64,000 nucleotides of DNA from Lytechinus pictus (GCF_037042905.1 NC_087256.1:24490001-24554000), one strand, 5' to 3'; positions 27,448-63,773 are shown, numbered from the stretch's first letter. Numbers and translations are program-made. The notes: generated by a model from the sequence alone, not told the origin.

Positions 27448-30400
27448 ATGTCCAAGAAGAAGCTTCATAATCCCATGAATTTCTTCCAAGAAAACCGTGG
27501 AGTAAATCAACAAAGAGCACTGGATACAGCACTCGTAGAATGTTGTCTGTCTGGAGATGACGATGCGGTGATCGACCTTTTGCAGAAGGGAGCCTCCCCG
27601 GAAGGAGAGGCGTATGCGATGACACAGATTGCGAGTGGGGAAAACTTCAAGCGGCCGCTGATGGCCGCAGTGATGAACGGGCACAAGAAGATTGCGCAGC
27701 TGTTGTTAGACAATGGAGGTATGATACTTAATACTAATAGAGTGTTATTGATTTTGGTTATTTTAGAACTGAATTCATAAAAACAAATCATCTTGCACTC
27801 TGTCTAGTCTCTCTTGATTAAACATTTGTCATTTCAGTTTCACTTGTTTTGAACCGTTTGAACGTCTTTCAATCGTGTTTTTTTATTTTTGGATTCAACT
27901 TTTTAAAATCTGCCAAAGGCAAAGTGAAAGTTTTTTTTAAAAAGTCAGTCATTTGATGATTTGCATTTATTGTATTGACATATATCAAAAACAGACTTTA
28001 TTTTGAACACAAATAATCAATGTGAATTATTTCCTTTGATGTTACCTTTCCTTTGTCTTGACTTTGAGTTTGATCTCTCCACTTCTAATACTTACATGTA
28101 TAGTGACTCCTTTTATCATCTCAAGTCATGCTGAACATTTTTATCTCCTCTCTGCTTCATAATACATATTAAAGAAGTCTTTAAATTGCCATCCTTCACC
28201 TCCTGCCTTTCATTCCTCATGCAATAGTTACAATGTTCTTTTCTTCATGTTCATTCAATGGTTCAGTTGATTCACTCTCAATGGTTTAGCATTTAGAAAT
28301 TAATAGTAAAATTAAAGTAATGTTTATTCATAGCTCATTTATATTAATTAGAAAGTCATTTATATTCATGTTCTTCCTTTTGTATACAAATCATCTTAAT
28401 TTTTTACAATTCTAAAAAAAAAAATGTTTATGCAAATAAATCTCGAGGGAGATCAGTACACCATCTCAAGGCAGATCACCTCAGGCAAGCACAGAGTAAG
28501 AATGTGTTATGTTAAAACTCTGTAGGGACATACCATGCCCGTATAGCCCCAGGCCAACCTCCAGATAGAAAAAATAATTGCAAACCATACAATATGCTGA
28601 CATGACTTTGATGAAATCATGTGTTCATCTTCTGTTTTAAATTTAATCTTCAACTATAAAGGCTTTAGTGTTTAGGATGGATGGACTGATCAAATAGAAA
28701 TTTCGTTGTAAGCAAAATTATTACCTACAATTTCTTTTTAAAAAGAAATTGTAGGGCATAATTTTGCTTACAACATTTGATTTATATATTTTGGGTCATA
28801 AGAGAAAAGTTCATAGTTCTGCAATCTGATGTACAGTCCTATGTAGAAAATCTGCTACACCTATTATTACACTTTTTGTGTAGTGCTCAGTCTTTTAAAA
28901 TGTGGAGCAAATTGTGATGTGATACTAGGAAAATTATTCCCTGAATTGATAAGCAATATTTCACATATGGGCTATTCCACGGTTACCCACGTTACATTTG
29001 GAGACACCTTGACTCATACTTGGAGCTGTAACTCCATTATTATTGATAGGAACTAAACATCTCTTTATCACAACAAAGTACGCAGTCTGACTATCCTTTG
29101 TATTTAAAAACAAAACTTGGGAAATTTTATTATGCTCCTGGCAAATCTTTGAAATGTGTCGGTTACTCATGTTACATGATTTGGACATGCATAAAATGAA
29201 ATGTCGACATACACCTGTAAGTGAAAAGTGACCTCATGGCTTTTATGAAAGTTGATTATATCCATTTCAAAGAAGTATATTAGGGAGACAAACTTTGTAT
29301 ATAATTAAAAAAATAAAGAACACATGGGTCTTACTAGGGGTGCAGATAAAGTGGTTACTCACATTACGGTTACGTTACATTTTGTCCATGTATGGTCAAC
29401 AACATAAATGTCACTAAAAATTCAATAAAGTGTGTAAGATTCATGTTTCTGTTCTGTAATAATATGAGTAGGATTTTAGACACCAGTTTATGTTTAAAGG
29501 TAACATTCTGAATAAGTTTCCTCCTCTTTTACTTATTGGTCAGTATATTAGTAATGTATTAACTAAACTGTACGAGATCTGGCTTGGGCTGTGTAAATCA
29601 AAAAATGTTAAACAAATGCATTCCATTTCTTGCCTCAAGCCTTCAACATCCATTAAAGAACCAGCAATAAGTATAAGTAAGGCAAACACAATTAAAATGT
29701 ACAGTTCAGATGGGCTACCTATTGAATTATAATTTTTAAGCTCATGTCCACCAACCTATGGAATTGCCCATATTGCTTTAGACTTTGTTTGGACAATATT
29801 GCAAGTAACAACTAACGAACATTTATTTGTCATAAGTTGTGCTGTTTTCTGACTATTGTTTAGTCAAGATGCAACTAACATGTATGCTACGCTCACAAAT
29901 ACCTTTACAACTACCATACGAACGATTTTGTCTTGCCTGCATACAGCAGAGCGGGACTATAGGTGCTGCTTTTCTGACAACAATGGCAGCGTCAACATTA
30001 AATCTTAACCTAAGGTTAAGTTTTTGAAATGCCATCATAACTAAGGAAGTACTGTATTTGGACCTAGTTCTTAAATTTAGCCAAAAAGGGTAATTAGGTA
30101 TTACTGAACATCCTTCCTGAGTTTCCGGTCACATGACCAATGTCAAATGCCATTTAGGGTCAATGAACTTTGGCCATGTAGGGGGTATTTCTTGATTTCC
30201 TTCATAATTTTGAAAGTTGGATCTGGTTCTTGAAACTTGGACATAAGAGTAATCAAGTATCATTAAACATCTTTTGTGAGTTTCAGGTCATACGACCAAG
30301 GTCAAAGATCATTTAGGGTCAATGAATTTAGATTATGTTCAAAGATTCAAAATGAAATCTTAACCAAGGTTAAGTTTTTGAAATGTCATAACTTTGAAAG

Positions 30401-33400
30401 TATATTATGGATCTAGTTAATGAAACTTGGACTTAAGAGTAATCAAGCATCAGTGAACATCCTGTGTGATTTTCAGGTCACATTACCAAGGTATATGAAC
30501 TTTGGCTGTGTTGGGGGTAATTGTTGCATTGCCATCATAACTTTGACAGTTTATGGATCTAGTTCATGAAATGAGGACATAATAATTAATCAAGTATCAC
30601 CGATCGTCTTGCACAAGTCTTCGCTCACACGATCAATGTCAACTGTCATTTAGGGTCAACGAACATAGTATTTTATTACCGGTATCATATGAATGGTGTT
30701 TTTGTGAATAATTATTCTGTAGTCGTTTTCAAATTCAGCACTGCTGCTATGTTGAATGCAGGCGAAACTGCCAGAGGCACTCCACTTGTTATAAATGGTA
30801 CAGTATGTAAAGGTATTTGTGACCATAGCATTGATTGAGGCTTGTGGAAATAAACTGGACAAGAAGAGCCCACCCCCCCCCCCCCCCCGGCCTCCACAAT
30901 CTTACTACATTTATAGTTCCACGTTCTTTTAAAATTTATTTGATACAGCTGATCCGTGTGGTGTGAACAGGTACCATGTCCAGCCCATCCATCTTGCTGC
31001 CCATGCCGGTCACAGAGATTGTGTGACTCTGCTTCTCAATGCTGGAGCAAATGCTAACGCGGAGACTTCGGACTTCAATGCGCCTGGTGTCTACAAAAGT
31101 GAGCTTGAAATAGTTCAATTTTGTTGTAAATATTGGTAAAAAGAAGAATCTTTTGTCATGCATTTGACAATTTTTATCTGATGGATACACTTATTTTGTC
31201 TTGAAAGAATAGAATCTTTGAAATTACAAGTACATGCAAAGACATGATAATTGTAGGTTATTATTGATTTATGGCCTCATTGACAGTCAAGATAATGCTA
31301 ATGCAGAGATTTCTGATTTTTATCAAGTCAAATATTTTGACATTAAACAGACAAGTTTCAATACATTTTTATCTTGAAAAACTAAAATTCTTAAAAATTG
31401 TAAGTAAAATTTCAAGAATTGTATGCTTTTAATGCAAATGTAATGGCCTGAATTACTACTGATATGTGACTCTATATCTCATTTTTCAACTTTCTTTTTC
31501 AAATTGTATTTTTGGGGACAAAAGCCAACCAGACCTACAATTTAAATTAAGGGGTCACCTAATGGTTTTTGCACCATGGAAAGAAAACAAAATCACAAAG
31601 GACAATATGAATAAAATAACACCAACCAGTAAAACAAACAAACAAACCTGCACTTTATGTTTGTGTTCAATAACATATTTTTATCATTTGTCAGTACAAG
31701 GCCCCATCTTACTAAGTGTTGCAATTGATCCGATCAATCGCAAACTATGGACGGCCAGCAATGTCAACATGTATTAAACATGTTTGTTCAAAATATTTTC
31801 TAGCTATGTGTATTCATGCATTAATTGTTTTCTTAAAAAATTCACTCTGCTTTTCTTTATTTACAAAGGACATTGTGTAAATTTCCTGTAGAAAAATTTA
31901 TGACACTGATGGATTTCCATAGAGTTACGATTGATTGGATCAATCGTAACTCTTTGTAAGATGGGCCCCAGGGGTATAAATTGTATAAACAGGAAATGTA
32001 AGAAAAGAATGTCACATCTTTGTTTGCAGAGCCATTTCGAGGAGGGACCACACCCTTACACATGGCAGCCAAGTTGAACCGCAGCGACTGCATTGAAGAG
32101 TTGGTACAACAAGGCCATGCTGATCTTGACAAGAAAGACGTGATTGGAATGAATTGTCTGAACACTGCATGCCAACTTGGCCACGAAGAGAGTGCTCTCA
32201 CCATTCTTAGGCTGTCTCGAGAAAAGAAGATAGCGGCTAAGTCATCGATAGGCACAGGTTAGTTTAAGTGAGGTTGCATGACATACTGAGAATACTGAGA
32301 TACAGTGATGCAAATAATGACTTCATTTGGATTATCAATATCTGAAACTCATCTGTTCTATTAATTCAGATAACAAAACTACCTCAAAATAGTACAATAA
32401 ATCAGCAACGGAAATCTAAAAGGTCCCGACATTATCCTTGATCCTGTTCAGTGTTATAGCTGCAGCGGTCGGGCCCAACATGCACAGATGATATCTGGCC
32501 ACCATTCTTCATGACCACCACTAATTTTTGTCTCACCTGCATAGCAGAGTGAGACTATAGGCGCCGCTTTTCCGACGGCGGCGGCGGCGTCAACACCAAA
32601 TCTTAACCTGAGGTTAAGTTTTTGAAATGACAGCATAACTTAGAAAGTATATGGACCTAGTTCATGAAACTTGGCCATAAGGTTAATCAAGTATTACTGA
32701 ACATCCTGCCTGAGTTTCACATCACATGACCAAGGTCAAAGGTCATTTAGGGTCAATGAACTTAGACCATGTTGGGGGAATCAACATCAAAATCTTAACC
32801 TAAGGTTAAGTTTTTGAAATGTCATCATAACTTAGAAAATATATGGACCTAGTTCATGAAACTTATACATAAGGTTAATCAAGTATCACTGAACATCCTG
32901 CATGAGTTTCACATCACATGACCAAGGTCAAAGGTCATTTAGGGTCAATGAACTTTGGCCGAATTAGGGGTATCTGTTGAATTACCATCATAACTTTGAA
33001 AGTTTATGGATCTGATTCATGAAACTTGGACATAATAGTAATCAAGTATTACTGAACATCCTGTGCAAGTTTCAGGTCACATGATCAAGGTCAAAGGTCA
33101 TTTAGGGTCAATGAACTTTGGCCAAATTGGGGTATTTGTTGAATTACAGCCATAAATTTGAAAGTGTGTTGGTCTAGTTCATAAAACCTGGACATAATAG
33201 TAATCAAGTATCACTGAACATCCTGTGCGAGTTTCAGGTCACATGATCAAGGTCAAAGGTCATGTAAGGTCAAAGAACTTTGGCCACATTGGGGGTATTT
33301 GTTGAATTGCCATCATATCTCTATAAGTGTATTGGTCTAGTTCATAAAACGTGGAAATAAGAGTAACCAAGTATCACTGAACATCTTGTGCGAGTTATAG

Positions 33401-35666: not shown

Positions 35667-37978
35667 GGATGGATAGACGGACAGACATATCGATAGATAG
35701 ATAGAGTGAAAGAGAGAGAGAGACAGATAGATAGATAGAAAGATATACATATTCAAATAGATAGATATATATTAAACAGAGAGATAGACAGATAGATAGA
35801 TATGTCATGTAGGTAGATAGATAGACAGACAGATAGATAGATAGAAAGATAGATAGATTTATAACATAGATAGCGGATAGATAGACGGATATGATTAGAT
35901 AGATATAATATGAAAAAAGTAATTATAATCTGTTTTATTTTGCAATATTTTAACTATTATTCATTGGAATTCTTATAAATAATCGCGCGCAAGATAGTTT
36001 AAAAAAAAAAAATCATGTTCACCCCCGGACTCGAACCCCTGCCCACATGACTGAATGAGATGCAAGTCTGACGCCGATTGAGCTACAATATTTGCCATAG
36101 ACTTTACACGTATGCAAAATACGAGAATCTCAAATCCAATTTTGCAAGTGAAATACGGGCATGATCCCGGCATCTGATCGGAAAATGAAGGCAACACTGG
36201 CGAAAGCTTAGAATCTCAGCTACAACATACTAAAAGCTCAGGGATAACTGACAAGAAAAAATGGAGATATGGCTCATGAAATAGAGGAATGTAGAATCTA
36301 GTTTTTAGAAAAAGTCATGTCCCATAGAGATTACACGCATAATTAGTAAAAATGACATGCCTTTATTATTTGCAATTTTTCAGGATGATCCGTTGATCAA
36401 AATGAAAAATAAATTAGAAAGAGTAAGACCTAAGCTACAACATATCCAAAATTGGGCGGAAATTGATCAATATTCATGGAGTTAGAGCCAAATTTGCATA
36501 ATTATTATGACGTCATAACACGCAAAATGGTTATTTTGTCATAATATACGTTAGGGTCCAATGAGACATGAAATCATATGTATGATTCAAAATTGGGGTC
36601 CCCGTTCGTTCTGAAGAGCTACAGTGAATTTTTAATAGGCATGTTTTTGCCCATATAGAGCCTATTGAAATAGCTCGCGGGCACGCGTGCTGCAAACTTT
36701 AATGGGTGCTCATTCCCTCATTAATGATCGTAGAGAGCTGATTGAGGTATCAATTTGATCAGAATTATATCATTGATGAAAACACAGAGAAAAAACAGCA
36801 AATTTATGCTACGTAACACCGTTACGCACGAAAACGCGCGCAGAAATGCTTAAAATGACCTGAAACGTACCCAAAATTAATTATAGGCCATTTTGAGCAT
36901 TTTTCAATTTTTCATGACCTTTGATGGCATCGACAGTTAACCTTTGACCTAAAGTTTATTTGATGTAAATATGACTGATTATTGATTATCCGTTATGTAG
37001 ATATGATGAAATAAATCATTTTACAAAATGGCGCCTAGATGACGTCATCATAACTTGATGAACTTGAAAAGCTAGGTATGCCGTTTCTGTGATAGACTTT
37101 ATATATGACGAAAAATTCAGCAAAATTGATATAGCCGATTTGTAGAAAAGTTGGCGACAAACATAGGTGCGAAAAAGAAATAAAGAAATAAATAAAGAAA
37201 ATTCTGACAAAATTAAGAGGTGATCTGTCAGAGACAGACCACCTAATGAATACATAAATAATATCTAGATTTTCAGGATTTGTACAAGTTTCGTTTTATT
37301 GCATTCTTGTAGGCTGTTTCAAGCGTTTTGTGATAAAGTGCGTTTATACGTTTATACAAGTAATTTACTAGTAGAAGGATATTTTATTATGCGATTCCTG
37401 GGATAGATCTGATTTATGTGTGTACTGTAATTTTCCTGACATGCAGTATCAACATCACACTGGTCTGTGCTATATTTTTTTTAGGATTAAAACCTCTTCA
37501 TCTTGTGGCCTTCAAGTCGGACGGAAGAGAGCACTTTCATCACGTACACACCATAGAGTATCACATGTCCCGTGATCATATAACCCTTGACCCCGGCCGA
37601 CCTCGCTATGACCCAGAACTGACCTGCTTCTTGCTGCAGTACGGAGCAGACTTCAACATCGAGTATCACGGCAGGTCGTTGTTACAACAGGAGATCTACA
37701 ACAAAGATGATGACGATGATGATGATGTCATCTTAGATACTATCTTGCGAGCGACGGACTCCTTTGAGATACCCCACCACCCCAGTCCGAGGGATAGCCA
37801 AATGTCAAGGGATTTAGAGAGATTGACCATGCTGCGGACTCTGTTCTCTAACCCGAGACCGCTCCAACATCTGTGCCGTCTTCGCGTCAGGAGGCTCCTC
37901 AGACCGACACGTCTTAATAGAGTCGGGGAGCTGGCTGTTCCCGATCGCCTCAAGGAATACATCCTCTTAAAATGTTGA
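27448..37978 (+). CDS. Ankyrin repeat and SOCS box-containing protein (ASB family), complete, 451 aa: join 27448..27718, 30949..31098, 32030..32257, 34271..34483, 37485..37978
   Basis: 1356-nt open frame with four phase-1 GT-AG introns. Multiple ankyrin repeats (RPLMAAVMNGHKKIAQLLLDNGAD, QPIHLAAHAGHRDCVTLLLNAGANAN, GTTPLHMAA, GNSPLHDC, GYTPLHFA, GLKPLHLV) and a C-terminal SOCS box (NPRPLQHLCRLRVRRLL...LAVPDRLKEYILL). Paralog cannot be assigned. Confidence 0.92.
28969..29769. mobile_element. Non-autonomous DNA transposon with 4-bp TSD (Sola2-like)
   Basis: TIR GGGCTATTCCA / TGGAATTGCCC, TSD ATAT on both sides, internal GTTACAT repeats. Confidence 0.7.
29926..30790 (+). mobile_element. HINE copy 3 (diverged), in ASB intron 1
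   Basis: GTCTTGCCTGCAT ... ATGCAGGCGAAAC subTIRs, related internal repeats, 3' end GCCAGAGGCACTCCACTTGTT. Confidence 0.75.
31700..31968. mobile_element. ~270-bp GGCCC-ended MITE (PIF/Harbinger-like), copy 1
   Basis: TIR GGCCCCATCTTAC..TTGCAATTGATCC / GGATCAATCGTAACTCTTTGTAAGATGGGCCC. Homologous to copies at 41435 and 44615, in the opposite orientation. Confidence 0.75.
32525..33476 (+). mobile_element. Helentron-associated non-autonomous element (HINE, DINE-1/pearl/Tsp-like), copy 1, in ASB intron 3
   Basis: Subterminal inverted repeat GTCTCACCTGCAT (32530-32542) / ATGCAGGTGAGAC (33442-33454), 5' hairpin, (GGC)n microsatellite, internal ~180-bp tandem units, T-rich flanks, no long TSD. Confidence 0.8.
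33669..34084. mobile_element. PIF/Harbinger-like MITE with TAA TSD
   Basis: ~38-bp TIR GCGACCGCACACCTTACGACCGGTCTGCGACCCGATTT and its reverse complement, flanked by TAA. Confidence 0.8.
35127..37247 (-). mobile_element. Second HINE family (2.1 kb) carrying a (GATA)n array and a tRNA-like Pol III unit, in ASB intron 4
   Basis: 15-bp subTIR ATTAGGTGGTCTGTC (35156-35170) / GACAGACCACCTAAT (37233-37247), hairpin AATTCGTC-atgcg-GACGAATT (35138-35158), and a CTAGT 3' end on the minus strand. Confidence 0.75.
35200..35910. repeat. (GATA/GACA)n compound microsatellite
   Basis: Direct reading; lies inside the minus-strand HINE. Confidence 0.9.
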
Positions 37979-39664
37979 GTATGCAATTATTGTCACAGCG
38001 GATAAAATCCACTTAAAACATTTCAATATTTATTGGATTATCATGGTATACATGAATTTGTGTATGAAGGTATGTATTTAAGCAGGCATGCAAAGAGATC
38101 TGACCTATATGAGGACTTTCAGTCAGAAGTTCAAAGTCTTATATCTGACTTTGTCCCCATTGAACAGGATGGCAGGGTTCACCTCCCTCTGGCATATTTG
38201 AGTTGATGATGATGTTATTATATTATGTTATAAAATGAACCATTTTTAATGAAAAGAGACTTTTGATGGAGAATAGAATTCACGTAGGAATAGTGATCTG
38301 ACGTGTACATTTTATTTCAGAACTGGCATTGGGAAAATGTTGAGATTTTTAACTGCTTTTAGTCGAGAATCCATCTATTTTTAATTTTTTTTTTTTTTTT
38401 TGGTAATAGTTTTCAAGTTCCTCTTTTAAAGAATTTTTTTCATGAGCTCTTCAGTGTACTTGCAGCAATTCCAGAATGCTATGACTTGTTGCTGCAAATC
38501 TGTTCAGCTTGCGGTCAAGTGCACCGAGCCATGTCAAGTTCGGAAGTTGACTTGAGATGTCTTTGAAATGTCTTTGCCATGAAACACTATTACAAGTGCT
38601 TCTAAAAAGTAAACCATCAACAACTCGCCATACTAACTTGCCTCTGTGTGTGTGAAAGTGGTATAGGTTTCCAAGTCTTCCAGGTCTGTTGCTTAAGTCT
38701 GTATCGTGAAGAGATTATCCTTGGTTATAAATAAAACTGATGATTTTATGTGACCGCAATTGATTCAACTCAAACTCAGATCAAGAATGATTTTAATTCA
38801 TATCTCTCAAGAAATCTAATTGAAATATCAATTTGATCTAGAATAAATTATAACTTTTGTAAAGAAAGGATCCAAATTGAATATAAAAGGTAAAGTCTAC
38901 CCCAAAATCTAGTCTCCTGTAAAAGTGAAAATTTTCACTGTGTGGAAATTTTCGCAGTAAAGAAATCCCCTCATCGTAATCCCCTCATCTTTGCAGCGAG
39001 CTCTATAATGATCTCATAATTTGTCCATAATTGGTAAAAATAACTTCCATTTTTCGACCTACTTTTCCTTCGATTTCAGTTGGGAAGGGGGAGTAACTGA
39101 TATATGTACCTGATGCCGAGCCATTGCAGATTCCCTCCCAGCCACCATGTGACTATGGCTGTTATTTTACAGTAACTCCTATCGAAATAACTCAGACGGT
39201 ATCACACATGATGACATACACGTAGCGGATGCCTATAATCTTCCCCATGAAAAAATACATTTGCATATTGAGACAACACAGTCCGCACCTAGACCATCCC
39301 CTCACGCCTGCATCCTCCATATGCTTCCCGGCTGTTTATTTCTGCCTTCAGGCTGAGAGACGAGACGCCTCGCTGCTGGGATGCTTGCCCCCTGACCTAG
39401 ACTCTCTTTTCTTATCCTTTTTTGGGGGATTTTATTTCATGTCTCATGACTCCAAATAATCAAGATAGCAGATAAATAATAATACAAAGTCCGTGAGAGA
39501 CCACACAAAAATGTTGGTCAGTTCACTCTCCATAAGTCTTGGGAATGGAGATGTGGATTAAAAGATTGACCTGGGAACAGTGGTCAGAACGGAAGTTGAG
39601 ATAATGATATGAGTGGAGGACTCTATAGAATCACAAGATGACTTGAATGTGTGGATCATTCCCC

Positions 39665-39870
39665 TTCTGTGTTGTATGCTCATTTGGAGTCTACTCTATT
39701 CCAAAATATACAGACGTTGTCACGTTGACCGTCTTGCTCTAGCCGATCGACGTCCTCCTTCCAAGGCGATCCTACACTGCTAGGCTTCAAGCTCTTCAGC
39801 TCTTCTAACATCGTTGACATAGCTGTCGTCACAGCATCCACAAGGAGAGGTTGAAGAGCCAGTAACGAGT
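39665..39870 (-). mobile_element. LINE ORF1-like fragment (coiled coil to RRM start)
   Basis: DVDRLEQDGQRDNVCIF, then frameshift, then GIE*TPNEHTTQK; resembles the ORF1 motif LEQYSRRNN.RIFGIPE..GE.T. Confidence 0.55.
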
Positions 39871-39946
39871 CTTATGATCATACAGTAACCGCCATATCCA
39901 CATTGTTACCATTTGGTTTTCTTATCTCTCCTTTTGCACCTGAAAA

Positions 39947-40125
39947 CAGCATCTTGACATTTTCTTGTGGGAAGTCAAGTATGCCAAGCGAGTTGATGGT
40001 CATCTTGGCAACACTGATTTGCTGAAGGAAGTCTGCAAATTTCCACAATCCGTTTGGGTCCCTGTCTGTGAACTAAGCTTGGCCACAAGTTTAGCTTCCT
40101 CATGAATTTGACAAAACAACACTAG
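39947..40125 (-). mobile_element. BEL/Pao LTR retrotransposon gag fragment
   Basis: Frameshifted RKLNLWP..RDPNGLWKFADFLQQISVAKMTINSLGILDFPQENVKML resembles the BEL gag consensus KLxxWPKI..RD..GLRKFSDFLQQ...EN.KML (recalled). Confidence 0.6.
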
Positions 40126-40487
40126 TTTACAGGCAAACCAAGTTTCTCTGCCCAGTAGGCCTTTTCAGCAAGTTTATTGTGTTTCTTGTCATTAACAGGA
40201 ACTTGCCTTTCTCTCAGAAATTGCTTGAGTTCAGCTGTATAAAAATGCTGAAATCTACAAACAGCGTCACCCATCGTGTTGGCCATGATTACAGGGTTCA
40301 GTCATGAAGTACAGTATAAGCATTCTAAAACTCCCATATTGAGCTTGAAAAAATGCTTGAGTTCAGCTGTAGAAAACTGATGAAATCTACGAACAGTGTC
40401 ACCCATCATGTTGGCCATGATTACAGGGTTCAGTCATGAAGTACAATAAGCATTCTAAAACTCCCAGATTGAGTTTGAAAAAATGCT
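40122..40487 (-). mobile_element. Truncated SAP-like ORF start, probably transposon-derived, with a ~132-bp tandem duplication
   Basis: ATG at 40286: MANTMGDAVCRFQHFYTAELKQFLRERQVPVNDKKHNKLAEKAYWAEKLGLPVN* shows a SAP-like LK.FL..R pattern. Segment ~40222-40353 is repeated at ~40354-40487. Confidence 0.45.
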
Positions 40488-40859
40488 TTGAAATTTCAGG
40501 TTAAAAAGAGGCTGAGTATTTAAGCTGTACTGTAGAAAATATATGACATTATATGGCATCAGCGCGGTTGAAAACGTGTTTGCCCCCGTTTCCTTCCCGT
40601 GATCTTCTGTGCGATATGTGCTCCCACGCAACAAGCACTATTTGCGATAACGTCGATTGGTGAGTGACTCCCTATCTCTCAGCTAGGCTGTATCAGTGCC
40701 AAGAAGAAGATAATGTTCTACAATTTTGTTTGATTTTCCAGGAATGGTGGTGTGCAACATGTTTAGTTTGGTTGCAGCTGCTGTCCTCAAAAAGATGATT
40801 TTATGAGTTTGGGGGATTGCGTTGCAGTCGATCCATCGCTTTTAAAAAATTGGGTCTCA

Positions 40860-41420
40860 TTTTTCAACATTTCAGCAGAAATGTACAAGATGTTTGTGTC
40901 TTTGCGGAGACATTGGGCAACATCAGATTTTGCTGCATCTCCTCCTCAGGACTGCCCTCCAAGCATCATTCTTAATAGTCCCACCAATACTGTCAACTGC
41001 TCCATGGTTGCATTGAAGTCTTGACTTTGGTAGAGTGTGTTAGCAAAACTTAAAGAAAAAAATTAATTGATGTGCTGCTCCATCGGACCAGTAGTGAAAG
41101 TTTGTGATAGGATAGCTCAGTTTTTTTCTCAGATCTCTAACTAAGATCTTGTTGAATCCCACAACAGCCTCTATGTTGTGGCACAGCTCATCAGACACCA
41201 ATGCAAAATGCACCTTGTCCTTTCCTTCTGAGAAGTACACCACATCAGTAAAAATGGTACAGCTGTCATTAGAACCAGTGGGCAGATTGGATCTCCCCCT
41301 GATGCTTGAGACTATAGTTCTCGGAAAAGTCTTCATGTACATGATGATCTCTCCAGGCCGAAGCATCCTCTTCAAGTCTTTTAACTCTGCATGCTGTCAC
41401 CACATTACTGACATATGACT
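40860..41420 (-). mobile_element. Degenerate DDD transposase relic, Sola2-type
   Basis: Frameshifted motifs HEDFSENYSLKHQGEIQSAHW, FALVSDELCH, HYWSDGAAHQ and HGAVDSIGGTIKNDAWRAVLR. These match my recollection of the Sola2 catalytic motifs (DFSENY / SDGxxxQ / HGKGxxDGIGG). Confidence 0.75.
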
Positions 41421-41434
41421 GGCATTTGGGCCAG

Positions 41435-41704
41435 GGCCCTGTCTTACAATGAGTTACGATTGATCCAATCAATCGTAACTATGGAAATCCATCAGTGTCA
41501 GAATTTTTTCTACAGGAAATTTGCAAAATATCCTTTGTAAGCAAAGGAGATCATACCAAATTGTCAAGAAATCAATGAATTTATGGATATACTTTTATAT
41601 CTAGATTTTTTTAATAAATAAACATGCATTTAATATGTTGACTTTGCTGGCTTTCCATAGTTGCGATTGATTGGATCAATCGCAACTCTTTGTAAGACGG
41701 GGCC
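41435..41704. mobile_element. ~270-bp GGCCC-ended MITE, copy 2, abutting the Sola2 relic
   Basis: CAG|GGCCCTGTCTTACAATGAGTTACGATTGATCC ... GGATCAATCGCAACTCTTTGTAAGACGGGGCC|CTG. Confidence 0.75.
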
Positions 41705-41939
41705 CTGGTGTAAATCAAGTGGCGTACCTATTGTTCAGGGGGGGGTGAACTATTCTTTCATCCCCCCTTGAATAGTGCGACATCAGGATTTACGCCCATG
41801 CTTATAAGAAAACAAACTTGGACATGAAAAATATTATTACTGATGTTCTGTATTTTGTTTTACTTGACCAGAATTTCTCCTTGGATTTGTTCAGTTGTTG
41901 AATCCTTTGTTGAACGGCCCTCATAATAATCGCTAGAGG

Positions 41940-42235
41940 GTATTCATTTGTCTCGCAATCTACTATGGTCAACAAGGAAATTCGTGATCACTCTCGCAAA
42001 AAGTGTTCACTAGCTTTCTAGGAAATTCGTGATCACTCTCGCAAAAAGTGTTCACTAGCTTACAAGTTCACGAGCTTTCGAGTGCCGCTGCAACTCTTTA
42101 TCAAGTGACGAAAATTATCTGACAACGTCGCCTATTTATACCAACCCCCAGGACCGTACACACGAACGCGGGAACAATAGGTGGGCACTGATCCGTTATG
42201 TGATTGGCCGACCAATCACATAACGGATCATTTTA
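41940..42235 (-). mobile_element. Penelope-like element pseudo-LTR remnant
   Basis: On - in order: CCAAT-containing perfect palindrome (42189-42230), TATAAATAGG (42140-42131), hammerhead motif, and a ~41-bp tandem duplication (41977-42017 and 42021-42061). Confidence 0.5.
42068..42108 (-). ncRNA. Minimal type-I hammerhead ribozyme motif of Penelope-like element type (U3-A8 variant)
   Basis: The minus strand reads UCAC-UUGAUAA-A-GAGU(ugcagcggc)ACUC-GAAA-GC-UC/GUGA: stem I UCAC/GUGA, stem II GAGU/ACUC, palindromic stem III AGCU. Confidence 0.6.
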
Positions 42236-42338
42236 GAATAAAGTTTGTTTTGTTCTGATTGATTTCAATATAGCTTGTTATCTATGGATTCCTTGCCTTT
42301 TTTTTGTAGCAGAACACTTCAAAATTTGAGCATGCTTG

Positions 42339-42596
42339 TTACAAATGGCTCCAAAATTTGTTAAAAAATAGCATATCCATACATTGGTTGGTTCCAGTTT
42401 CAATATTACTCCAGTCTTGAGCGGAGAGCTGACAAAAGCAGACCTTATTATAATACCTATAATTCCTTGTAAATATCTTCTGTTTATCTCTTTCCATCTT
42501 TAATTCATTCTGAAATATAACATAAATGGGAAAATGATCAGAACTATCAGACAAGCCATTAGCAATGCTTGCTCGGTGCATGCTGGGACAATCCAT
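42339..42596 (-). mobile_element. Non-LTR retrotransposon (CR1/L2-group) endonuclease C-terminal fragment
   Basis: LSDSSDHFPIYVIF...KIFTRNYRYYNK..F..LSAQDWS is the typical end of an APE endonuclease plus linker. Confidence 0.7.
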
Positions 42597-43084
42597 TTTT
42601 ATCGCAGGGGCGAATATAGTGCTTTCATCAAAGGGAGTAGGACTAAATGTTGGACAGTGATGTCAGTGATATAATACCGTGTATAAAATATGTGAAACCA
42701 TAGCCTAGGAAGTTGGACAAGACGGTAAATTGAGCTGTGATTACATGTTTGCTTCATGTCAATCTCACTGAATAAAATCTATTTTTTCTAAGCATACTTC
42801 TTTAATAACAATTATCAGAAGACGTTGGTCTATTGTGAGACCTTTCACCATATTAAGGAGTTTCAAGTTATACATAAATGACTTCAATGCCAAATCCCCC
42901 TTTTATTTGGAATGACTGAATCTGTTAAATCAGTTTTTACCGACATCTTTAACAAAGGTGGTGATGCACACATAACCTGTGTGTAGAGGTATTTTCTGCC
43001 CATCCACACTGTATTCGTACAGTGGTTTCCCCTCTAACCAAAAACGAAGTGTTGGGATGATGAGGTACTCAAAATCTCTGCTTA

Positions 43085-44345
43085 TTTAGAGCTGTCTGAT
43101 CTCTTGTCGGGAAAGCCTGAGCATGCCTTGTGAAATGATCGGTTACCACGAGAACATTATCTATATTCCTCCTCCTGACAACTCTAGGCTCAGAAAGTCA
43201 AGGCAGACTACAGTATAGTTCAAGCGGTCGTGAGTTCTTAATTGAGGTCAACGGTGCTCTTGACTTGGATTCTCTCGTCTTCCTTACAGTGCAATGTTTA
43301 CATTGTCGGATGTATTCTTGTATACACAGGATTTCAGTCCAGGACGGAAGTATCAATCTTGCATCAGAGCAAAAGTCCTCTCTACTCCGAGGTGACCCAT
43401 GTCTTGATGTGCCTATTGAAGAGTTGTTTTCCTCATTCCCTTTGGAAGAACTACCAGTGTGCGATCGTCATCTCTTCAGTTTGGTACTTGTCTGAATCCA
43501 TCGGGCCATCCGTCTCTGATGATCCGGGCCAACATGATCATAACTGGATCGACTGCTGTCTCTCTTAGCAACGCTTGTTCTCAGAGAACACAGACAAATC
43601 ATAAACCTCTAGCTTATTCCATCGTCGAAGTAGCATTCTAACGGCAACTTTTTCTTTCTTGATCTGATGTGATCCAGGTTTGCTACCACTTTCTATTAGC
43701 TCAATGACGCGGTTATTGACCAAATATTCCATCTGAAACTGAGCGATCTCTGCCAAAGTCATTCCTTGTAACTCTGTGCTTTTGCACTCATTCTGTTGAT
43801 ACTGATCTGTAGCATGTATGTTGTGATGCTCAGCCACCTTGAAAGGAATGTCCTCTTCCGGAAATGTCATGGGCAGTGGTAGTGAAGTCCAAGGTGCGCC
43901 TTACTTCTTTTGAAGAAATTCTTGACAAGCTGTCAGCGTTATCGTTAGACTTCCCTGGCTGGTACTCTATGTCTGGATTACTCTGTGCCAAATCGTTAAC
44001 CCAGCGTTTACCATGAGCGTCCATGCGAGTTTTTCCTAGAACGTATGTTAGTGGGTTATTATCTGTAATTGCTGTTACCTTCCTTCCGATTTCATAGTCT
44101 CGAAATTTCACGGTAGCAGCTCAATGTAATGCTCTGAATTCAAGTGTATATGAGCCTGATACCTGGCCTCTCCAGACGACAAGCTCCTGCTAGCATAGGA
44201 GATCACTCGCTCTTTACCATCATGTACTTGTGCAAGTACTGCTCCTACATGTAGACAAATCAAAGATGCCTCCGTCTGAAGGATTAATGGCAGCTCAAAA
44301 TCCAAATATCCCAGAGCTGGAGCTGACACTAGTGCCTCTGAAATG
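43085..44345 (-). mobile_element. Degenerate Ty3/Gypsy LTR retrotransposon pol fragment (RNase H to integrase)
   Basis: EALVSAPALGYLDFELPLILQTEAS..VGAVLAQ..ERVISYASRSLS, TDNNPLTYVL..RWV..IEYQPGKSNDNADSLSR, and integrase HHCC/core HQDMGHLGVERT..QCKHC..VLVVTDHFTRHAQAFPTRDQTA. Broken by frameshifts and stops. Confidence 0.9.
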
Positions 44346-44614
44346 ATGAAGACCAAAAAAAATTAATTTTGATTTGAAATTGATTTAACATTTGATAAAT
44401 AACAAATTTAGAATTTTAAACCTCACAACACTGCCCACAGCCCACACAGAATATACCTGTTGAATTGAAATAAATAAGTGCAAAGAAAGAAATAAACTTA
44501 TCAATTTATAGAAATACATTAATTTCATTTACAATCGAGGGAACAATAACATATTTATGCAGACTTCTTCATATTCCAGATAGACAATATAATAAACATG
44601 TTGTACAAGAACTG

Positions 44615-44883
44615 GGCCCTGTTGTACAAAGAGTTACGATCGATCCAATCAATCATAACTATGGAAATCCATCAGTGTCATAATTTCTTCTACAGGAAAT
44701 TTGTAAAATGTCCTTTGCAAACAAAAGAGAACACACCAAATTGTCAAGAAATCAATGAATTTATGGTTATACATTCATATCTAGAATGTTTTTTGAACAA
44801 AAAAGCATTTAATATGTTGACATTGCTGGCCGTCCACAGTTGCGATGGATTAGATCAATCGCAACTCTTTGTAAGACGGGGCC
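44615..44883. mobile_element. ~270-bp GGCCC-ended MITE, copy 3
   Basis: CTG|GGCCCTGTTGTACAAAGAGTTACGATCGATCC ... CTCTTTGTAAGACGGGGCC|CAG. Confidence 0.75.
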
Positions 44884-45551
44884 CAGGATTCGTAAAATTT
44901 CATAAAAGTTTTCATAAACAAAATAGTTACCTAATTATTTACCTGACGCTATCGGTTAAAATTGAAGCTAAATTCCTCTGTCTGACTCAAATTATGAAAC
45001 AAAGGTGGACATCAATATCAGAGTAGGAAAATTGCAAAAAATCAACAAAAATGCAGGTGAATGAAATATCGTCTGTCTCTGTTATTTTTATGGAATTCGA
45101 GCTGACGTCAGAAGGGTTGTGCACAGGCGCAGTTGATTTGATGAAAAAGGGATATTCCAGTCGTGCGGGGGGGGGGGGGGGAGGGGATGTAAACAAGGTC
45201 TATTGTGATAACAGAAATAATAAACATTTATACAAGATAAATGCATATGCTAATAAATAATGATAATAAATTGATTCTTTAACATAACATATATATATAT
45301 ATATGTATATGTATATATATCTCTGAAGTTTGAACACCTGAATTTTATTTATCTCAAATGACTTTACTACAGTTCATTCATAACATTGGCAGGAATCAGT
45401 AGAGTTACCAATATTTACTTTTCATAGAAAAAATGAGAAATGCTTTTCACTTGAGGGTAATACATGTATAAATGGCCCTATGAATGAATAGGCCTTGTGT
45501 TCCATAGCCCTTGCTTTATTGCAAAGACATTTCAAGAATCTCATATTTTTA

Positions 45552-46506
45552 TTGTCTCACCTGCATAGCAGAGTGAGACTATAGGCGCCGCTTTTCCGAC
45601 GGCGACGGCGGCGGCGGCGTCAACACCAAATCTTAACCTGAGGTTAAGTTTTTGAAATGACAGCTTAACTTAGAAAGTATATGGACCTAGTTCATGAAAC
45701 TTGGCCATAAGGTTAATCAAGTATTACTGAACATCCTGCCTGAGTTTCATGTCACATGACCAAGGTCAAAGGTCATTTAGGGTCAATGAACTTAGACCAT
45801 GTTGGGGGAATCAACGTCAAAATCTTAACCTAAGGTTAAGTTTTTGAAATGTCATCATAAATTAGAAAATATATGGACCTAGTTCATGAAACTTATACAT
45901 AAGGTTAATCAAGTATCACTGAACATCCTGCATGAGTTTCACGTCACATGACCAAGGTCAAAGGTCATTTAGGGTCAATGAACTTTGGCCGAATTGGGGG
46001 TATCTGTTGAATTACCATCATAACTTTGAAAGTTTATGGATCTGATTCATGAAACTTGGACATAATAGTAATCAAGTATTACTGAACATCCTGTGCAAGT
46101 TTCAGGTCACATGATCAAGGTCACAGGTCATTTAGGGTCAATGAACTTTGGCCAAATTGGGGTATTTGTTGAATTACAGCCATAAATTTGAAAGTGTGTT
46201 GGTCTAGTTCATAAAACTTGGACATAAGAGTAATCAAGTATCACTGAACATCTTGTGCGAGTTTCAGGTCACATGATCAAGGTCAAAGGTCATGTAAGGT
46301 CAAAGAACTTTGGCCACGTTGGGGGTATTTGTTGAATTGCCATCATATCTCTATAAGTGTATTGGTCTAATTCATAAAACGTGGAAATACGAGTAACCAA
46401 GTATCACTGAACATCTTGTGCGAGTTATAGTAGTTTTCAAAATCAGCACTGCTGCTATATTGAATCGCGTGATGCAGGTGAGACGGCCAGAGGCATTCCA
46501 CTTGTT
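45552..46506 (+). mobile_element. HINE copy 2, near-identical to 32525..33476
   Basis: Same subTIRs, same internal tandem array and same 3' end GGCCAGAGGCATTCCACTTGTT. Confidence 0.8.
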
Positions 46507-54101: not shown

Positions 54102-54174
54102 TGGAGAACCCGGGCATCGATCCCGGTACCTCTCGCATGCTAAGCGAGCGCTCTACCATCTGAGCTAGCTCCCC
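54102..54174 (-). tRNA. tRNA-Ala-AGC: tRNA-Ala (anticodon AGC)
   Basis: Reverse complement GGGGAGCTAGCTCAGATGGTAGAGCGCTCGCTTAGCATGCGAGAGGTACCGGGATCGATGCCCGGGTTCTCCA (73 nt) folds as a cloverleaf with the G3.U70 alanine identity pair and the ATCG T-loop typical of eukaryotic tRNA-Ala. A T6 terminator lies at 54087-54092 and a TATA-like run about 30 nt upstream. Confidence 0.97.
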
Positions 54175-61007: not shown

Positions 61008-63066
61008 CTGGGACGCTTAGGCATAGTCATGCACATACGGCCACAAAACCTGAAACTTTCGCCCCCTAGATTTTTACTTTCCCTCTAAAAGATCTAGCCC
61101 TAAATCATGTACATGGGTTTCAACTTCATTTCCGACATTTCTGCGATATCGATTTCATTTTTAAAGAAGAATTCATAAAAAAAACGAGAAAAATGTTATG
61201 AAAAGATGGGAAGAGCTTACGGCCGTGTTTACGTCGCCATCTTGATTTCTTTGTCTTCCGCTTGGCGACAGCACGCAAATCGTGCGATGTGCGTGCTGTC
61301 GCCGAGGCTTCAATGGGGAGTAAGCCTACGTAGAGTAGATGACTTTTACTCCCCAGAAGCCTCCAGGCTAACCACATGGCAAGAATAATGTGTGACGCCC
61401 TGTATCTCCTTGTTGAAGGCACCCTTGCATTTTAGCTGCAGTAAAGTGAACATCTACATGTAGGAAGTACTCTTCACACACATATTAAATTCATTCTACC
61501 AGCAGATACAATGGACATTTACAAGTGTCTAAATCATGGCCATATAGCTCATATGCTAAGAAAACCAAGAAGTGAAAAACTGTGATGACACTGACCACTT
61601 GAGAGGCCAGTTTGACCAATTTCCAAAGTGGTCAGTGGGCTGAACATTTATCAAGGTGGTGATACATGCTTAGATCTCTGAAATATCACATTTTGGTGGC
61701 TTCTAAATTATTCCTGAGTTTTCAACAGCCATTGAAATAAAAACTGACCTAATACTGGACATGTTGTGCTACTGAAGTTTAATTTAAATGTAATGGGACC
61801 TCACTCAGCTGTAATGCTGCATGTAGCCAAACGGCCTCTGATGTTCTTATGACATTGTCTTGTCGTTAAACGGAGAAGAACAAGAAGTTCTAGCTTTTGA
61901 TGTGAAATAATAGTATGTGAAAAGTTCCACACATACACTCACAACCAGTGCGTTTATCTTCATCAGTTTGAAGCAGCACTTTGGAAGAAGAAGCCTAATG
62001 TAAGTAGGCCTGTGTTGAAACACATAAAAGGTCTAAACTAACATTGATTTCACCAGGAAATCCACATTTACGAAAAATCATTTTGATAAAACGGGGTTAA
62101 TCCTGTTTTTTTTTCCTTTATAGAATACTCTTAAAACATATAAAGGATTCAAAATTTGAATTAAAAATTACATAAATGGAACAGATTTCTTACCAGACCG
62201 ATGTCTTGTGTCTCTAAAATGTTCCCATGCTCCCTACATAAACACAATGCGTATAACGTTTGACACATTTTTCATGATGTGTAGATGTGCTGGTCCACAC
62301 AGAGAGAATCGATGGGATCCGGGCTTACCTCATCCCCGAGGACAAGTTCTCGGTCGAAAGGCAAACTTGTCTTGGCATACTTGAATTTGAAACTCAATCG
62401 AAGGGACACTACCCCTTCAGCCAAGTGTCACATACAAGTACATGAATGTCTCCAATCGAGGAGAGGAGCACTGGGGGAAAATCTTGCCAATGCAGGTTTT
62501 CTCGATAGGGAAGAGGTTATATTATAACTTTGTACATGTACGTAGGATGAGTGGTCGCAGTCAGACTTCGTCTTTGCTGTAGGCCTAGTCTATAAATTCA
62601 ATTATGAACCAAAGTTAGCTATAAAATTTGTGTTACCATGTGGTTTTACATGTAGGCTACTGTATGTTTAGTTTAGTCAGCCATTTGCATGAATTATGAT
62701 TGCTAACTTTAGTCCGTGTCAAAAATGCATGTACTGCAAAGACGAAGTTCGACTGATAGTTTTCATGACAATGTTGAGATAAAATATGTCGGATCCGAAA
62801 TAGACCTGTTCCCGATGCATGATGTTGCTGAAATTCAGGTAATCAAATTTGTGTAAAATGTAAATACAAATTGTCCTAAAACGTGCATTTGGGTTGGCTA
62901 CAAAAACTTTTATGCCTGATCTTGCCTGCCAGCATGTATATCAGATCGCACAATGTTAAACCATGCCATGGCTGATTTGTATTTTTATTTTAAACCATGG
63001 CAGATTGACCTGAATGTCTTCGATGCACCGCTTTTGATGGATGGGTGATTGTGAGATAATAGAAAC

Positions 63067-63773
63067 ATGGCCAAGAATAAGAAAAGACGAGGTCTGACAT
63101 CCAAAGTGGAACAGCGCAGCAAGTCAACAGACGTTAAACACAATCCATTTGAAGTTAAAATCAACAAACAAAAGCACAACATTCTAGGAAGAAAGAACAA
63201 ACATGGAAAAGGAATGCCGGCGGTATCCAGGTCTAAAGGACTGCAAAAGGTAAGGTTCTCTTTGCCATTTTGAATCTTCCAAACTGAAGTTGTGAATTAC
63301 ATGTAATGTATTCGAGCTTGCACAGTGGTGGATCTGGCTGGCTGGTCCCTCCAAAGTTTTGTATGGGTTGTTTTTCTATCGTTGTGTTTTTTTCAAAAAA
63401 GGCCACCGTGCATCGTTAAAGAAATATGTTAACTGTATTATAAAACTATGATGGGAAGCTATTGGGCACAGAATTAACCAGCAAGAGAAAAAAAAGTACT
63501 GATGGACCATGTGTCTGGCATTTTAGGGCAAAAATTTGTGTCTCATTTTGTTCTTTTCCAATTTTGACCCCACTCATCTTTGTTATTAGCAATCATGACA
63601 AATTCTCAACTCCCAAAAATTCTTTATTCTATGTGCAGAGAAATGCCACCCTGCTGCAGGAGTACAAACAACGGCATAAAACGAACAAGTTCCTTGACAG
63701 AAGACTAGGAGAGGACGATCCTGGAATGTCAGTCGAGGAGAAGATGATGGAGAGGTTTACGCTGGAAAAACAG
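63067..63773 (+). CDS. NOP14: Nucleolar protein 14, first two coding exons (63067..63249, 63639..63773); continues beyond the window
   Basis: MAKNKKRR...NPFEVKINKQKHNILGRK...GMPAVSRSKGLQK/RNATLLQEYKQRHKTNKFLDRRLGEDDPGMSVEEKMMERFTLEKQ matches the Nop14 N-terminus. Phase-0 GT-AG intron. The window ends in a pyrimidine-rich ...CAG that may be the next acceptor. Confidence 0.93.

What the first reader, a model, noticed from the sequence alone, without database searches (positions are those of the whole stretch)
39600..44350. Strand-biased patchwork of unrelated transposon fragments behind the ASB gene: candidate uni-strand (flamenco-like) piRNA cluster
Seen: within about 4.7 kb lie short, broken, often abutting pieces from seven different sources. 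They are LINE ORF1 (39665-39870), BEL/Pao gag (39947-40125), a SAP-like ORF (40122-40286), Sola2 transposase (40860-41420), a Penelope pLTR/hammerhead (41940-42235), CR1/L2 endonuclease (42339-42596) and Gypsy RNaseH-integrase (43085-44345). All seven are on the minus strand, antisense to transcription running on from the ASB gene (stop at 37978); the chance of seven agreeing is 1/64 if orientation were random. I recognised no TE coding relics elsewhere in the window. Established: uni-strand piRNA clusters such as Drosophila flamenco are TE-fragment graveyards oriented antisense to one precursor transcript. Inference: this may be a compact anti-transposon piRNA locus fed by ASB read-through/3'UTR or a nearby promoter.
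Basis: partly seen in the sequence, partly recalled or inferred. Interest (0 to 1): 0.8.

Follow-up and report, generated by a model that had tools for sequence, protein, structure and literature searches.

The report
Same-strand transposon relics behind ASB gene
A 4.7-kb patch of old, broken transposon pieces that all point the same way really does sit behind the ASB gene and is weakly transcribed antisense to them, but it looks more like an ordinary transposon graveyard than a proven piRNA defence locus, because no small-RNA data could be found.

Summary
Between 39.68 and 44.36 kb lie internal fragments of at least five unrelated transposon families, all on the minus strand:
- a BEL/Pao gag relic
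- a DDE-transposase core
- a truncated copy of an abundant Penelope-like repeat
- a LINE endonuclease relic
- a Ty3/Gypsy RNaseH-integrase relic

The 'SAP-like ORF' occurs once in the genome and is not shown to be a transposon.

The block is unique in the 812-Mb genome. I found no transposon coding relics in the 19 kb downstream, on either strand.

Stranded RNA-seq gave about 42 read-equivalents in the unique parts of the block. All have the polarity of ASB mRNA, that is + strand, antisense to the relics. Coverage is patchy and not continuous with the ASB exon.

No small-RNA run was listed, so the piRNA claim stays untested. Several points argue against it. The block is 20-50 times smaller than flamenco-type clusters. 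The relic families are old and low-copy, 69-89% identical to their one to four relatives. Five or six agreeing orientations give 1/16 to 1/32, judged after the fact.

The scan holds two similar unchecked notes elsewhere in this genome. My odds are about 0.6 ordinary graveyard and about 0.2 real piRNA source.

The parts
37418..37978 (+). Last coding exon of the ASB gene (SOCS box, stop at 37978). RNA-seq cover ends near 38200.
   Evidence: ORF. SOCS_box E 6e-13, and ankyrin repeats in upstream exons. RNA reads with first mate on the minus strand only.
39683..39871 (-). Identity unverified; one other degenerate copy in the genome.
   Evidence: paralog on C14. No Pfam match. No homolog. Weak Transposase_22 lead.
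39864..40126 (-). BEL/Pao gag relic, part A (about residues 315-399 of the related polyprotein).
   Evidence: 69% DNA identity to copies on C18, C10 and C8. tblastn match. Pfam domains of the related 1898-aa ORF.
40127..40655 (.). A 530-bp insertion that splits the BEL/Pao relic. It holds the 'SAP-like ORF' (40122-40286, minus), a 131-bp tandem duplication (40218-40488) and an ~85-bp dispersed repeat (40575-40660).
   Evidence: The related BEL copies are contiguous across this point. Tandem duplication. The ORF is unique in the genome. SAP match at E 0.0067, below Pfam's cut-off.
40653..40778 (-). BEL/Pao gag relic, part B (residues 263-304).
40785..41429 (-). It covers the catalytic-core third of a ~730-aa transposase and has a frameshift and stops.
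   Evidence: phmmer hits. tblastn E 5e-48 to P0001 residues 349-581. One other genomic copy. Integrase-core-like fold, weak.
41424..41715 (.). MITE with 84-nt terminal inverted repeats. It is palindromic, so it has no orientation.
   Evidence: I1. Further copies at 44601-44897 and 31697-31976. Very high depth in runs.
41923..42230 (-). Truncated copy of an abundant ~440-485-bp repeat. On the minus strand it carries CCAAT and TATA-like boxes and a minimal hammerhead-like motif (42068-42108). It is probably Penelope-derived.
   Evidence: Copies 96-98% identical. Sequence. Family RNA is mostly minus-sense. No Rfam hit. U3-A8 variant and inverted pairs described in PMC4209133.
42227..42662 (-). 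LINE relic: the C-terminal end of the AP-endonuclease domain plus linker.
   Evidence: 82% identical to the one other copy, on C7. That copy has Exo_endo_phos and RVT_1 pieces. tblastn match.
43274..44356 (-). Ty3/Gypsy pol relic (RNaseH to the integrase zinc-binding domain), with a nested ~120-bp dispersed repeat at 43481-43598.
   Evidence: RT_RNaseH_2 E 1e-13. 80-89% identical to one copy on C4. Domains of that copy. tblastn match.
44601..44897 (.). Second MITE copy, in direct orientation to the first (88% identical).
39001..40200 (+). Patch of low-level + strand RNA. It runs antisense to the ORF1-like and BEL relics and also covers unique non-transposon DNA at 39001-39400.
   Evidence: table 2: first mate on the minus strand only, as for the ASB exon. 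38000-39700 is unique in the genome.
43001..43800 (+). Second patch of + strand RNA, antisense to the Gypsy relic. The laid stretch ended at 43800.
   Evidence: table 2.

Best explanation
The block is an ordinary decayed transposon graveyard in the 25-kb spacer between the ASB gene and NOP14.

Several unrelated elements inserted here long ago: BEL/Pao, a DDE transposon, a LINE, a Ty3/Gypsy element and an unnamed ORF1-like element. Deletions cut each down to a short internal fragment. Younger small elements then nested into the debris: a Penelope-like repeat, MITEs and ~100-bp repeats.

The shared minus orientation most likely comes from chance. It may be helped by selection against sense-oriented transposon signals (polyadenylation and splice sites), because the stretch is transcribed at low level on the + strand.

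The + strand RNA is a weak downstream or lncRNA-like transcript. It may or may not be processed into small RNAs.

Shown: the fragment identities, their orientation, the uniqueness of the block, the nesting and the RNA polarity. Inferred: the cause of the co-orientation and the lack of a dedicated function.
For: - Fragment identities and minus orientation.
- Each relic is a small internal part of its element, for example BEL residues 263-399 of 1898 and transposase residues 349-581 of 737.
- Nesting of later insertions: the 530-bp insert in BEL, the ~120-bp repeat in Gypsy, and the MITEs.
- The relic families are low-copy and diverged. BEL is 69-75% identical to four copies. LINE is 82% to one copy. 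Gypsy is 80-89% to one copy. The transposase is 46% (aa) to one copy.
- The block is only 4.7 kb. No other transposon coding relic was detected in 44.4-63.4 kb on either strand.
- Antisense bias of transposons inside transcribed regions without any piRNA role is documented for mammalian genes (PMC3517506 and PMC1794541).
- With five or six independent orientable pieces, the chance of agreement is 1/16 to 1/32. The pattern was picked out after the fact from a scan of hundreds of windows. Two similar notes exist in the same genome.
Against: - All six orientable pieces agree, and all are antisense to the only RNA detected. About 42 read-equivalents have + polarity and none has minus polarity in unique bins.
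- In run X16, RNA depth at 39001-39200 (4.1) exceeds that of the ASB exon (1.9). Plain read-through does not explain this.
- The three similar single-strand mosaics noted in this genome could reflect a real recurring architecture rather than reader bias.
Confidence: 0.6

Rival explanations
1. The block is a genuine compact uni-strand piRNA source. A + strand precursor, started from a promoter near 39.0 kb or continued from ASB, runs antisense through the transposon relics. It is processed into antisense piRNAs that target related elements.
For: - All six orientable transposon pieces are antisense to the + strand.
- Only + strand RNA is found in unique bins, at roughly a quarter of the per-kb density of the ASB terminal exon.
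- The block is unique and is not cargo of a larger repeat.
- LINE and Gypsy relics keep 31-74% of their 25-mers within three mismatches of a related copy.
- Antisense insertions in transcribed host sequence can seed piRNAs regardless of gene identity in Drosophila (PMC13226689).
Against: - No small-RNA data were available.
- The block is 4.7 kb. Flamenco is about 180 kb (PMC6724695), and flam-like clusters were found with 100-kb scanning windows (PMC10643416).
- The relics belong to old families with one to four other copies, so there is little to defend against.
- The BEL relic shares almost no 25-mer with its relatives: none in part A and 13 of 99 in part B at three or fewer mismatches.
- RNA cover is patchy, with no reads over the transposase relic or over 42.2-43.0 kb.
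- The tissue of the RNA runs is unknown.
Confidence: 0.2
2. The abutting same-sense fragments were joined in one event and then landed here once. That event could be a chimeric cDNA made by reverse-transcriptase template switching between transposon RNAs, or capture by a gene-capturing transposon. Co-orientation would then be a by-product of how the mosaic was made.
For: - Fragments abut with 0-6 bp between them: 39871/39864 and 40778/40785.
- All are short internal pieces in one sense.
- Similar mosaics were noted twice more in this genome (unchecked).
Against: - No terminal LINE tail, poly(A) or target-site duplication was seen around the block.
- The 610-bp stretch 42663-43273 is unique, non-transposon DNA inside the mosaic.
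- The BEL relic is split by a later insertion, and the young Penelope-like repeat and the MITEs are clearly separate events.
- The block has no second copy.
Confidence: 0.08
3. The whole block is part of one larger repeated element, or a segmental duplicate.
For: None found.
Against: Searches of the whole genome with 38000-45000, in five overlapping pieces, return only the locus itself plus isolated matches to single fragments. No place holds two adjacent fragments other than the two BEL parts.
Confidence: 0.02

Closest known systems
Drosophila flamenco and flam-like unistrand piRNA clusters (PMC10643416, PMC6724695)
   Same: Fragments of unrelated transposons share one orientation, antisense to RNA made from one strand only. 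The locus lies outside coding sequence and downstream of a gene.
   Different: - Flamenco is about 180 kb or more and is dominated by Gypsy-family fragments closely related to active elements. This block is 4.7 kb with one Gypsy relic among five or six classes.
- All the relics here come from old low-copy families.
- piRNA production, the defining property, is untested here.
Genic 3'UTR piRNA sources with antisense transposon insertions (PMC13226689)
   Same: Transposon sequence lies antisense to a host transcription unit. [quoted passage not shown]
   Different: In that system the insertion lies inside the exported mRNA's 3'UTR. Here ASB RNA cover stops near 38.2 kb. The block starts 1.7 kb past the stop codon, after a stretch without reads, and no read joins the two.
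Antisense orientation bias of LTR and LINE elements within transcribed regions (PMC3517506, PMC1794541)
   Same: Retroelement relics are preferentially retained antisense to host transcription, with no defence function implied. This needs only that the region be transcribed, which one search shows.
   Different: The bias is documented for introns of mammalian genes and is moderate, not absolute. This is an intergenic stretch of an unnamed non-mammalian animal genome (inferred from its transposon content, not tested), and all pieces agree.
Penelope-like element pLTRs with minimal hammerhead motifs, and non-autonomous derivatives (PMC4209133; bioRxiv 10.64898/2026.07.22.740005)
   Same: This concerns the repeat at 41923-42230 only. 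It has a minimal type-I hammerhead-like motif with the U3-A8 core variant reported for Cercyon elements. Partial copies lie close together on opposite strands. Most copies are solo.
   Different: No link to a reverse transcriptase/GIY-YIG ORF was tested. Rfam models do not recognise the motif. Copies are too alike for covariation support.

Membership tests
Uni-strand (flamenco-like) piRNA cluster | Transposon fragments overwhelmingly in one orientation, antisense to the cluster transcript | tested here: met
   Six of six orientable pieces are on the minus strand. The MITEs are palindromic and the 530-bp insert cannot be oriented.
Uni-strand (flamenco-like) piRNA cluster | A precursor transcribed from one strand across the cluster | tested here: inconclusive
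   Only + polarity reads occur in unique bins of three stranded RNA-seq runs, about 42 read-equivalents. Cover is patchy and about 6% of each run was read. The tissue is unknown.
Uni-strand (flamenco-like) piRNA cluster | Dense 23-32-nt, 1U-biased small RNAs from one strand, dependent on PIWI proteins | not testable with these tools
   No single-end or small-RNA run was listed for this organism.
Uni-strand (flamenco-like) piRNA cluster | A large transposon-dense domain, tens to hundreds of kb | tested here: not met
   Relics span 4.7 kb. None was detected in 44.4-63.4 kb on either strand. Elsewhere in the window there is only a LINE tail relic at 485-615. For scale, flamenco is ~180 kb (PMC6724695) and flam-like clusters were sought with 100-kb windows.
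Uni-strand (flamenco-like) piRNA cluster | Content able to target active transposon families | tested here: inconclusive
   Share of 25-mers within three mismatches of the nearest copy: BEL 0 of 218 and 13 of 99, LINE 94 of 300, Gypsy 136 of 183 and 353 of 717. Each family has only one to four other copies.
Genic 3'UTR piRNA source | Transposon fragment lies within the host mRNA's 3'UTR exon | tested here: not met
   ASB cover ends at about 38200. There are almost no reads at 38201-39000 in three runs, and no joint links the exon to the block. Sampling is thin.
BEL/Pao LTR retrotransposon (relic 39864-40126 and 40653-40778) | Homology to a polyprotein with the Pao aspartic peptidase and BEL-type gag (DUF1759) | tested here: met
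   The relic aligns to residues 263-399 of a 1898-aa ORF that carries DUF1759, Peptidase_A17, Integrase_H2C2 and DUF5641.
Ty3/Gypsy LTR retrotransposon (relic 43274-44356) | Pol order RT, RNaseH, integrase, with RT_RNaseH_2 and Integrase_H2C2 domains | tested here: met
   RT_RNaseH_2 matches at E 1e-13 in the window. The nearest copy has RVT_1, RNaseH and Integrase_H2C2 in that order. The window aligns to the RNaseH and zinc-binding parts.
Sola2 DNA transposon (relic 40785-41429) | Sola2-type transposase; 4-bp AT-rich target duplications and short terminal inverted repeats (PMC3627910) | not testable with these tools
   No Sola reference sequence was available. The homologs have no Pfam family and no names. 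The relic has no termini. Only a weak DDE/RNaseH-like fold signal was obtained.
Penelope-like element pLTR (41923-42230) | Hammerhead motif in the terminal repeat | tested here: inconclusive
   No Rfam hammerhead at E up to 1. By eye, a minimal motif with a UUGAUAA core, a helix II hairpin and GAAA sits on the minus strand. This U3-A8 variant is reported for Penelope elements. The predicted fold is not more stable than shuffles.
Penelope-like element pLTR (41923-42230) | Repeats flank a reverse transcriptase plus GIY-YIG endonuclease ORF | not tested
   All 12 sampled copies were solo or were paired inverted fragments without an ORF.
LINE with AP endonuclease (relic 42227-42662) | Homology to an element with Exo_endo_phos and RVT_1 domains | tested here: met
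   82% DNA identity to a C7 element with both domains. The CR1/L2 clade was not tested.
LINE ORF1 (relic 39683-39871) | Similarity to Transposase_22 / L1 ORF1 RRM | tested here: not met
   No Pfam match for the window piece or for its paralog. No homolog. Only a 0.84 language-model lead at rank 15.

The most novel reading that the evidence does not exclude
This genome may use many small, gene-adjacent, strictly uni-strand transposon mosaics as piRNA sources. This one would be fed by its own + strand transcript starting near 39.0 kb. The two similar mosaics noted elsewhere in the genome would be further members of the same class.
Probability: 0.15. Interest if true: 0.45.

Novelty: already known. 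Interest (0 to 1): 0.3.

Why it matters
If small RNAs did come from this block, it would be a compact, easily dissected uni-strand piRNA source in a non-model animal. Together with the two similar loci, it would hint that small gene-adjacent traps supply transposon memory, rather than giant clusters. As the evidence stands, it shows mainly that co-oriented transposon debris plus weak antisense transcription can be found without any proof of defence function. Strand coherence of five or six fragments alone is a weak predictor.

Tried and rejected
- **Hammerhead search.** Rfam at gathering and at E up to 1, on the window and on three full copies of the abundant repeat, found no hammerhead. ARAGORN found no tRNA-like head in that repeat.
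- **Pfam on window ORF pieces.** It named only the Gypsy RNaseH.
- **ORF1-like piece.** Nothing was found in the 5.8-billion-protein search, and its paralog has no Pfam match.
- **Transposase homologs.** No Pfam family and no source names. A text search of the supplements of a Sola2 paper for three motifs of this family found none in the Sola2 alignment file. Because that text came from machine reading, this is not evidence either way.
- **Small-RNA runs.** A second run search restricted to single-end RNA libraries listed none.
- **Runs X1-X4.** These are labelled 'RNA?' but look like low-coverage DNA: short contigs at depth 3-9 and repeats at depths in the thousands. I did not use them as expression evidence.
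- **Composite transposon bounded by the two direct MITE copies (41424-41715 and 44601-44897).** Considered and dropped. MITEs of this family are very abundant and a third copy lies in an ASB intron.
- **Whole block as cargo of a larger repeat.** Rejected.

Full report
**Setting**

The window is C12:24,490,001-24,554,000 of an 812-Mb animal genome.
- An ACE-like gene lies at its start on the + strand (Peptidase_M2).
- The ASB gene follows on the + strand from about 27.4 kb. It has ankyrin exons, and its last exon carries a SOCS box and stops at 37978.
- The next gene, NOP14, starts near 63.1-63.4 kb, also on the + strand.
- A tRNA-Ala gene sits at 54102-54174 on the minus strand.

The block therefore lies at the ASB end of a 25-kb spacer between two + strand genes.

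**The fragments**

Searching the block against its own genome and fetching the matches let me name most pieces.

- *BEL/Pao.* Window 39885-40126 and 40656-40778 are 69-75% identical to four copies of one element. In those copies the two parts are only about 14 bp apart. The copy on C18 carries a 1898-aa frame with DUF1759, Peptidase_A17, Integrase_H2C2 and DUF5641. This is a BEL/Pao gag relic on the minus strand, split by a 530-bp insertion.
That ORF is unique in the genome, scores below Pfam's SAP cut-off, and overlaps a 131-bp tandem duplication. I do not count it as a transposon fragment.
A profile-free search of 1.8 billion proteins found 52 relatives, the best 65% identical over the 118-aa query. 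tblastn of that 737-aa protein covers window 41429-40785 at E 5e-48. The family has no Pfam model and no names. A predicted structure (pLDDT 74) resembles retroviral integrase catalytic cores at weak E-values but high probability. This fits a DDE transposase. The label Sola2 could not be tested.
- *LINE.* Window 42227-42550 is 82% identical to the single other copy, a LINE on C7 with endonuclease and reverse-transcriptase matches.
- *Gypsy.* Window 43274-44356 is 80-89% identical to one Gypsy-type copy on C4 with RVT_1, RNaseH and Integrase_H2C2. The window piece itself matches RT_RNaseH_2 at E 1e-13. A ~120-bp dispersed repeat is nested in it at 43481-43598.
- *ORF1-like piece.* Window 39683-39871 has one degenerate paralog and no nameable relative.

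In every named case the related element's coding strand corresponds to the window's minus strand.

**The abundant repeat**

Window 41923-42230 is about 285 bp of a 440-485-bp repeat that is present in very many copies, 93-98% alike.

Read on the minus strand, full copies carry three ATTTGCAT octamers, then a CCAAT box, then a TATAAATA box. After these comes a minimal hammerhead-like motif with a UUGAUAA core, a helix II hairpin and GAAA.

Rfam does not recognise the motif. All the same, the U3-A8 core variant, the solo copies and the nearby copies on opposite strands are exactly what Cervera and de la Pena described for Penelope-like elements (PMC4209133). Inverted partial copies abut the repeat in at least four of the 12 sampled loci, and three more carry a second, inverted copy within 500 bp.

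RNA from the family is mostly minus-sense relative to the window copy. I therefore accept a minus orientation and a probable Penelope origin. No link to a reverse-transcriptase ORF was tested.

- A MITE with 84-nt inverted ends lies at 41424-41715. A second copy lies at 44601-44897 and a third in an ASB intron.
- An ~85-bp dispersed repeat lies at 40575-40660.
- The nested ~120-bp repeat lies in the Gypsy relic.

None of these has an assignable strand.

**Is the clustering real?**

- A tblastn of every long frame from the fetched BEL, LINE and Gypsy elements against the whole window found only one further relic, a LINE tail at 485-615 on the minus strand.
- All 53 stop-free frames of 62 aa or more in 44.4-63.4 kb, on both strands, gave no transposon Pfam family. 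The only hit was Nop14.
- These tests are of limited sensitivity: Pfam named only two of ten pieces inside the block. They treat both strands alike, and they did not turn up plus-strand relics.
- The block has no second copy in the genome.

**Statistics**

After dropping the SAP-like ORF, five named pieces plus the ORF1-like piece are independent and orientable. Agreement of five or six has a two-sided chance of 1/16 to 1/32. The pattern was chosen after inspection, in a scan that has notes on 785 windows of this genome and holds two further notes of the same kind. This is not strong evidence by itself.

**RNA**

No holder of the stretch is on record as RNA, but three ribo-depleted, paired, stranded runs of the same species were available as raw reads. 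About 6% of each was laid on 37801-43800 at 97% likeness.

- On the ASB exon, every read pair has its first mate on the minus strand. This calibrates the library: first mate opposite to the RNA.
- In every unique bin of the block the same holds. From the depths I estimate about 42 read-equivalents with + polarity and none with minus polarity. The ASB's last 400 bp gave about 13.
- Signal lies at 39001-40200, faintly at 40401-40800, and at 43001-43800.
- No reads lie at 40801-41400 or 42401-43000, and almost none at 38201-39000 or 42201-42400.
- In one run, depth at 39001-39200 (4.1) exceeds that on the ASB exon (1.9). That stretch is unique, non-transposon DNA.
- No read joins the patches or links them to the exon.

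It looks like a separate or spliced unit rather than simple read-through.

Caveats: sampling is thin, the tissue is unknown, and the reads differ from the reference at many sites. Some gaps may therefore reflect my 97% threshold.

**Small RNAs**

A search for single-end RNA libraries listed none. The defining property of a piRNA cluster is untested.

**Weighing the readings**

For a piRNA source:
- the orientation is uniform;
- the RNA has the right polarity;
- the block is unique;
- Drosophila work shows that antisense insertions in any transcribed host sequence can seed piRNAs (PMC13226689).

Against it:
- the size is 4.7 kb, compared with ~180 kb for flamenco (PMC6724695) and with the 100-kb scanning windows used to find flam-like clusters (PMC10643416);
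- the relic families are old and have one to four other copies;
- the BEL relic has no 25-mer within three mismatches of its relatives in its larger part, and 13 of 99 in its smaller part; the LINE and Gypsy relics keep 31-74%;
- antisense retention of retroelements in transcribed DNA is known without any piRNA role (PMC3517506 and PMC1794541).

My estimates are about 0.6 for an ordinary graveyard with incidental transcription, 0.2 for a real piRNA source, 0.08 for a mosaic joined in one event, and 0.02 for cargo of a larger element. The remainder is unassigned.

**Novelty**

Transposon graveyards, antisense bias and uni-strand piRNA clusters are all known kinds. Nothing shown here lies outside them. 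The finding merits a small-RNA test but not a high score.

Noticed in passing
window 41923-42230; full copies L010:968-1453, L011:1001-1436: An abundant young repeat of ~440-485 bp, with copies 93-98% alike. On one strand it carries three ATTTGCAT octamers, a CCAAT box, a TATAAATA box and then a minimal hammerhead-like motif. It is transcribed, mostly in that sense. Copies differ by one or two 45-bp units; reads skip 41974 to 42020. It is often inserted in a satellite.
   Followed up: partly
window 41424-41715, 44601-44897, 31697-31976: A MITE family of ~290 bp with 84-nt terminal inverted repeats. Depth in the sequencing runs is thousands of times that of unique DNA, so it is very abundant.
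   Followed up: partly
window 45549-46430, 29955-30482, 32553-33243; also L003:8700-10000, L011, L020: A ~162-bp tandem satellite is present downstream of the block, in two ASB introns, and on other chromosomes.
   Followed up: no
window 485-615 (minus): A relic of the C-terminal end of the same LINE family as at 42227-42662. It lies in the ACE-like gene region and is also antisense to its host gene.
   Followed up: no
window 54102-54174 (minus): A tRNA-Ala(AGC) gene stands alone in the spacer between ASB and NOP14.
   Followed up: no
window 63055-63785 (plus): The first coding exons of a NOP14 homolog lie here (Pfam Nop14, E 2e-20). This fixes the downstream end of the intergenic spacer.
   Followed up: partly
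window 37801-40200 and 43400-43800: RNA reads differ from the reference at many fixed sites, for example four sites within 110 bp at 39970-40078. This suggests high polymorphism between the sequenced animals and the assembly.
   Followed up: no
runs X1-X4 laid on window 37801-43800: Runs labelled 'RNA?' give short contigs at depth 3-9 over unique DNA and depths in the thousands over repeats. They look like low-coverage genomic DNA, not expression data.
   Followed up: no
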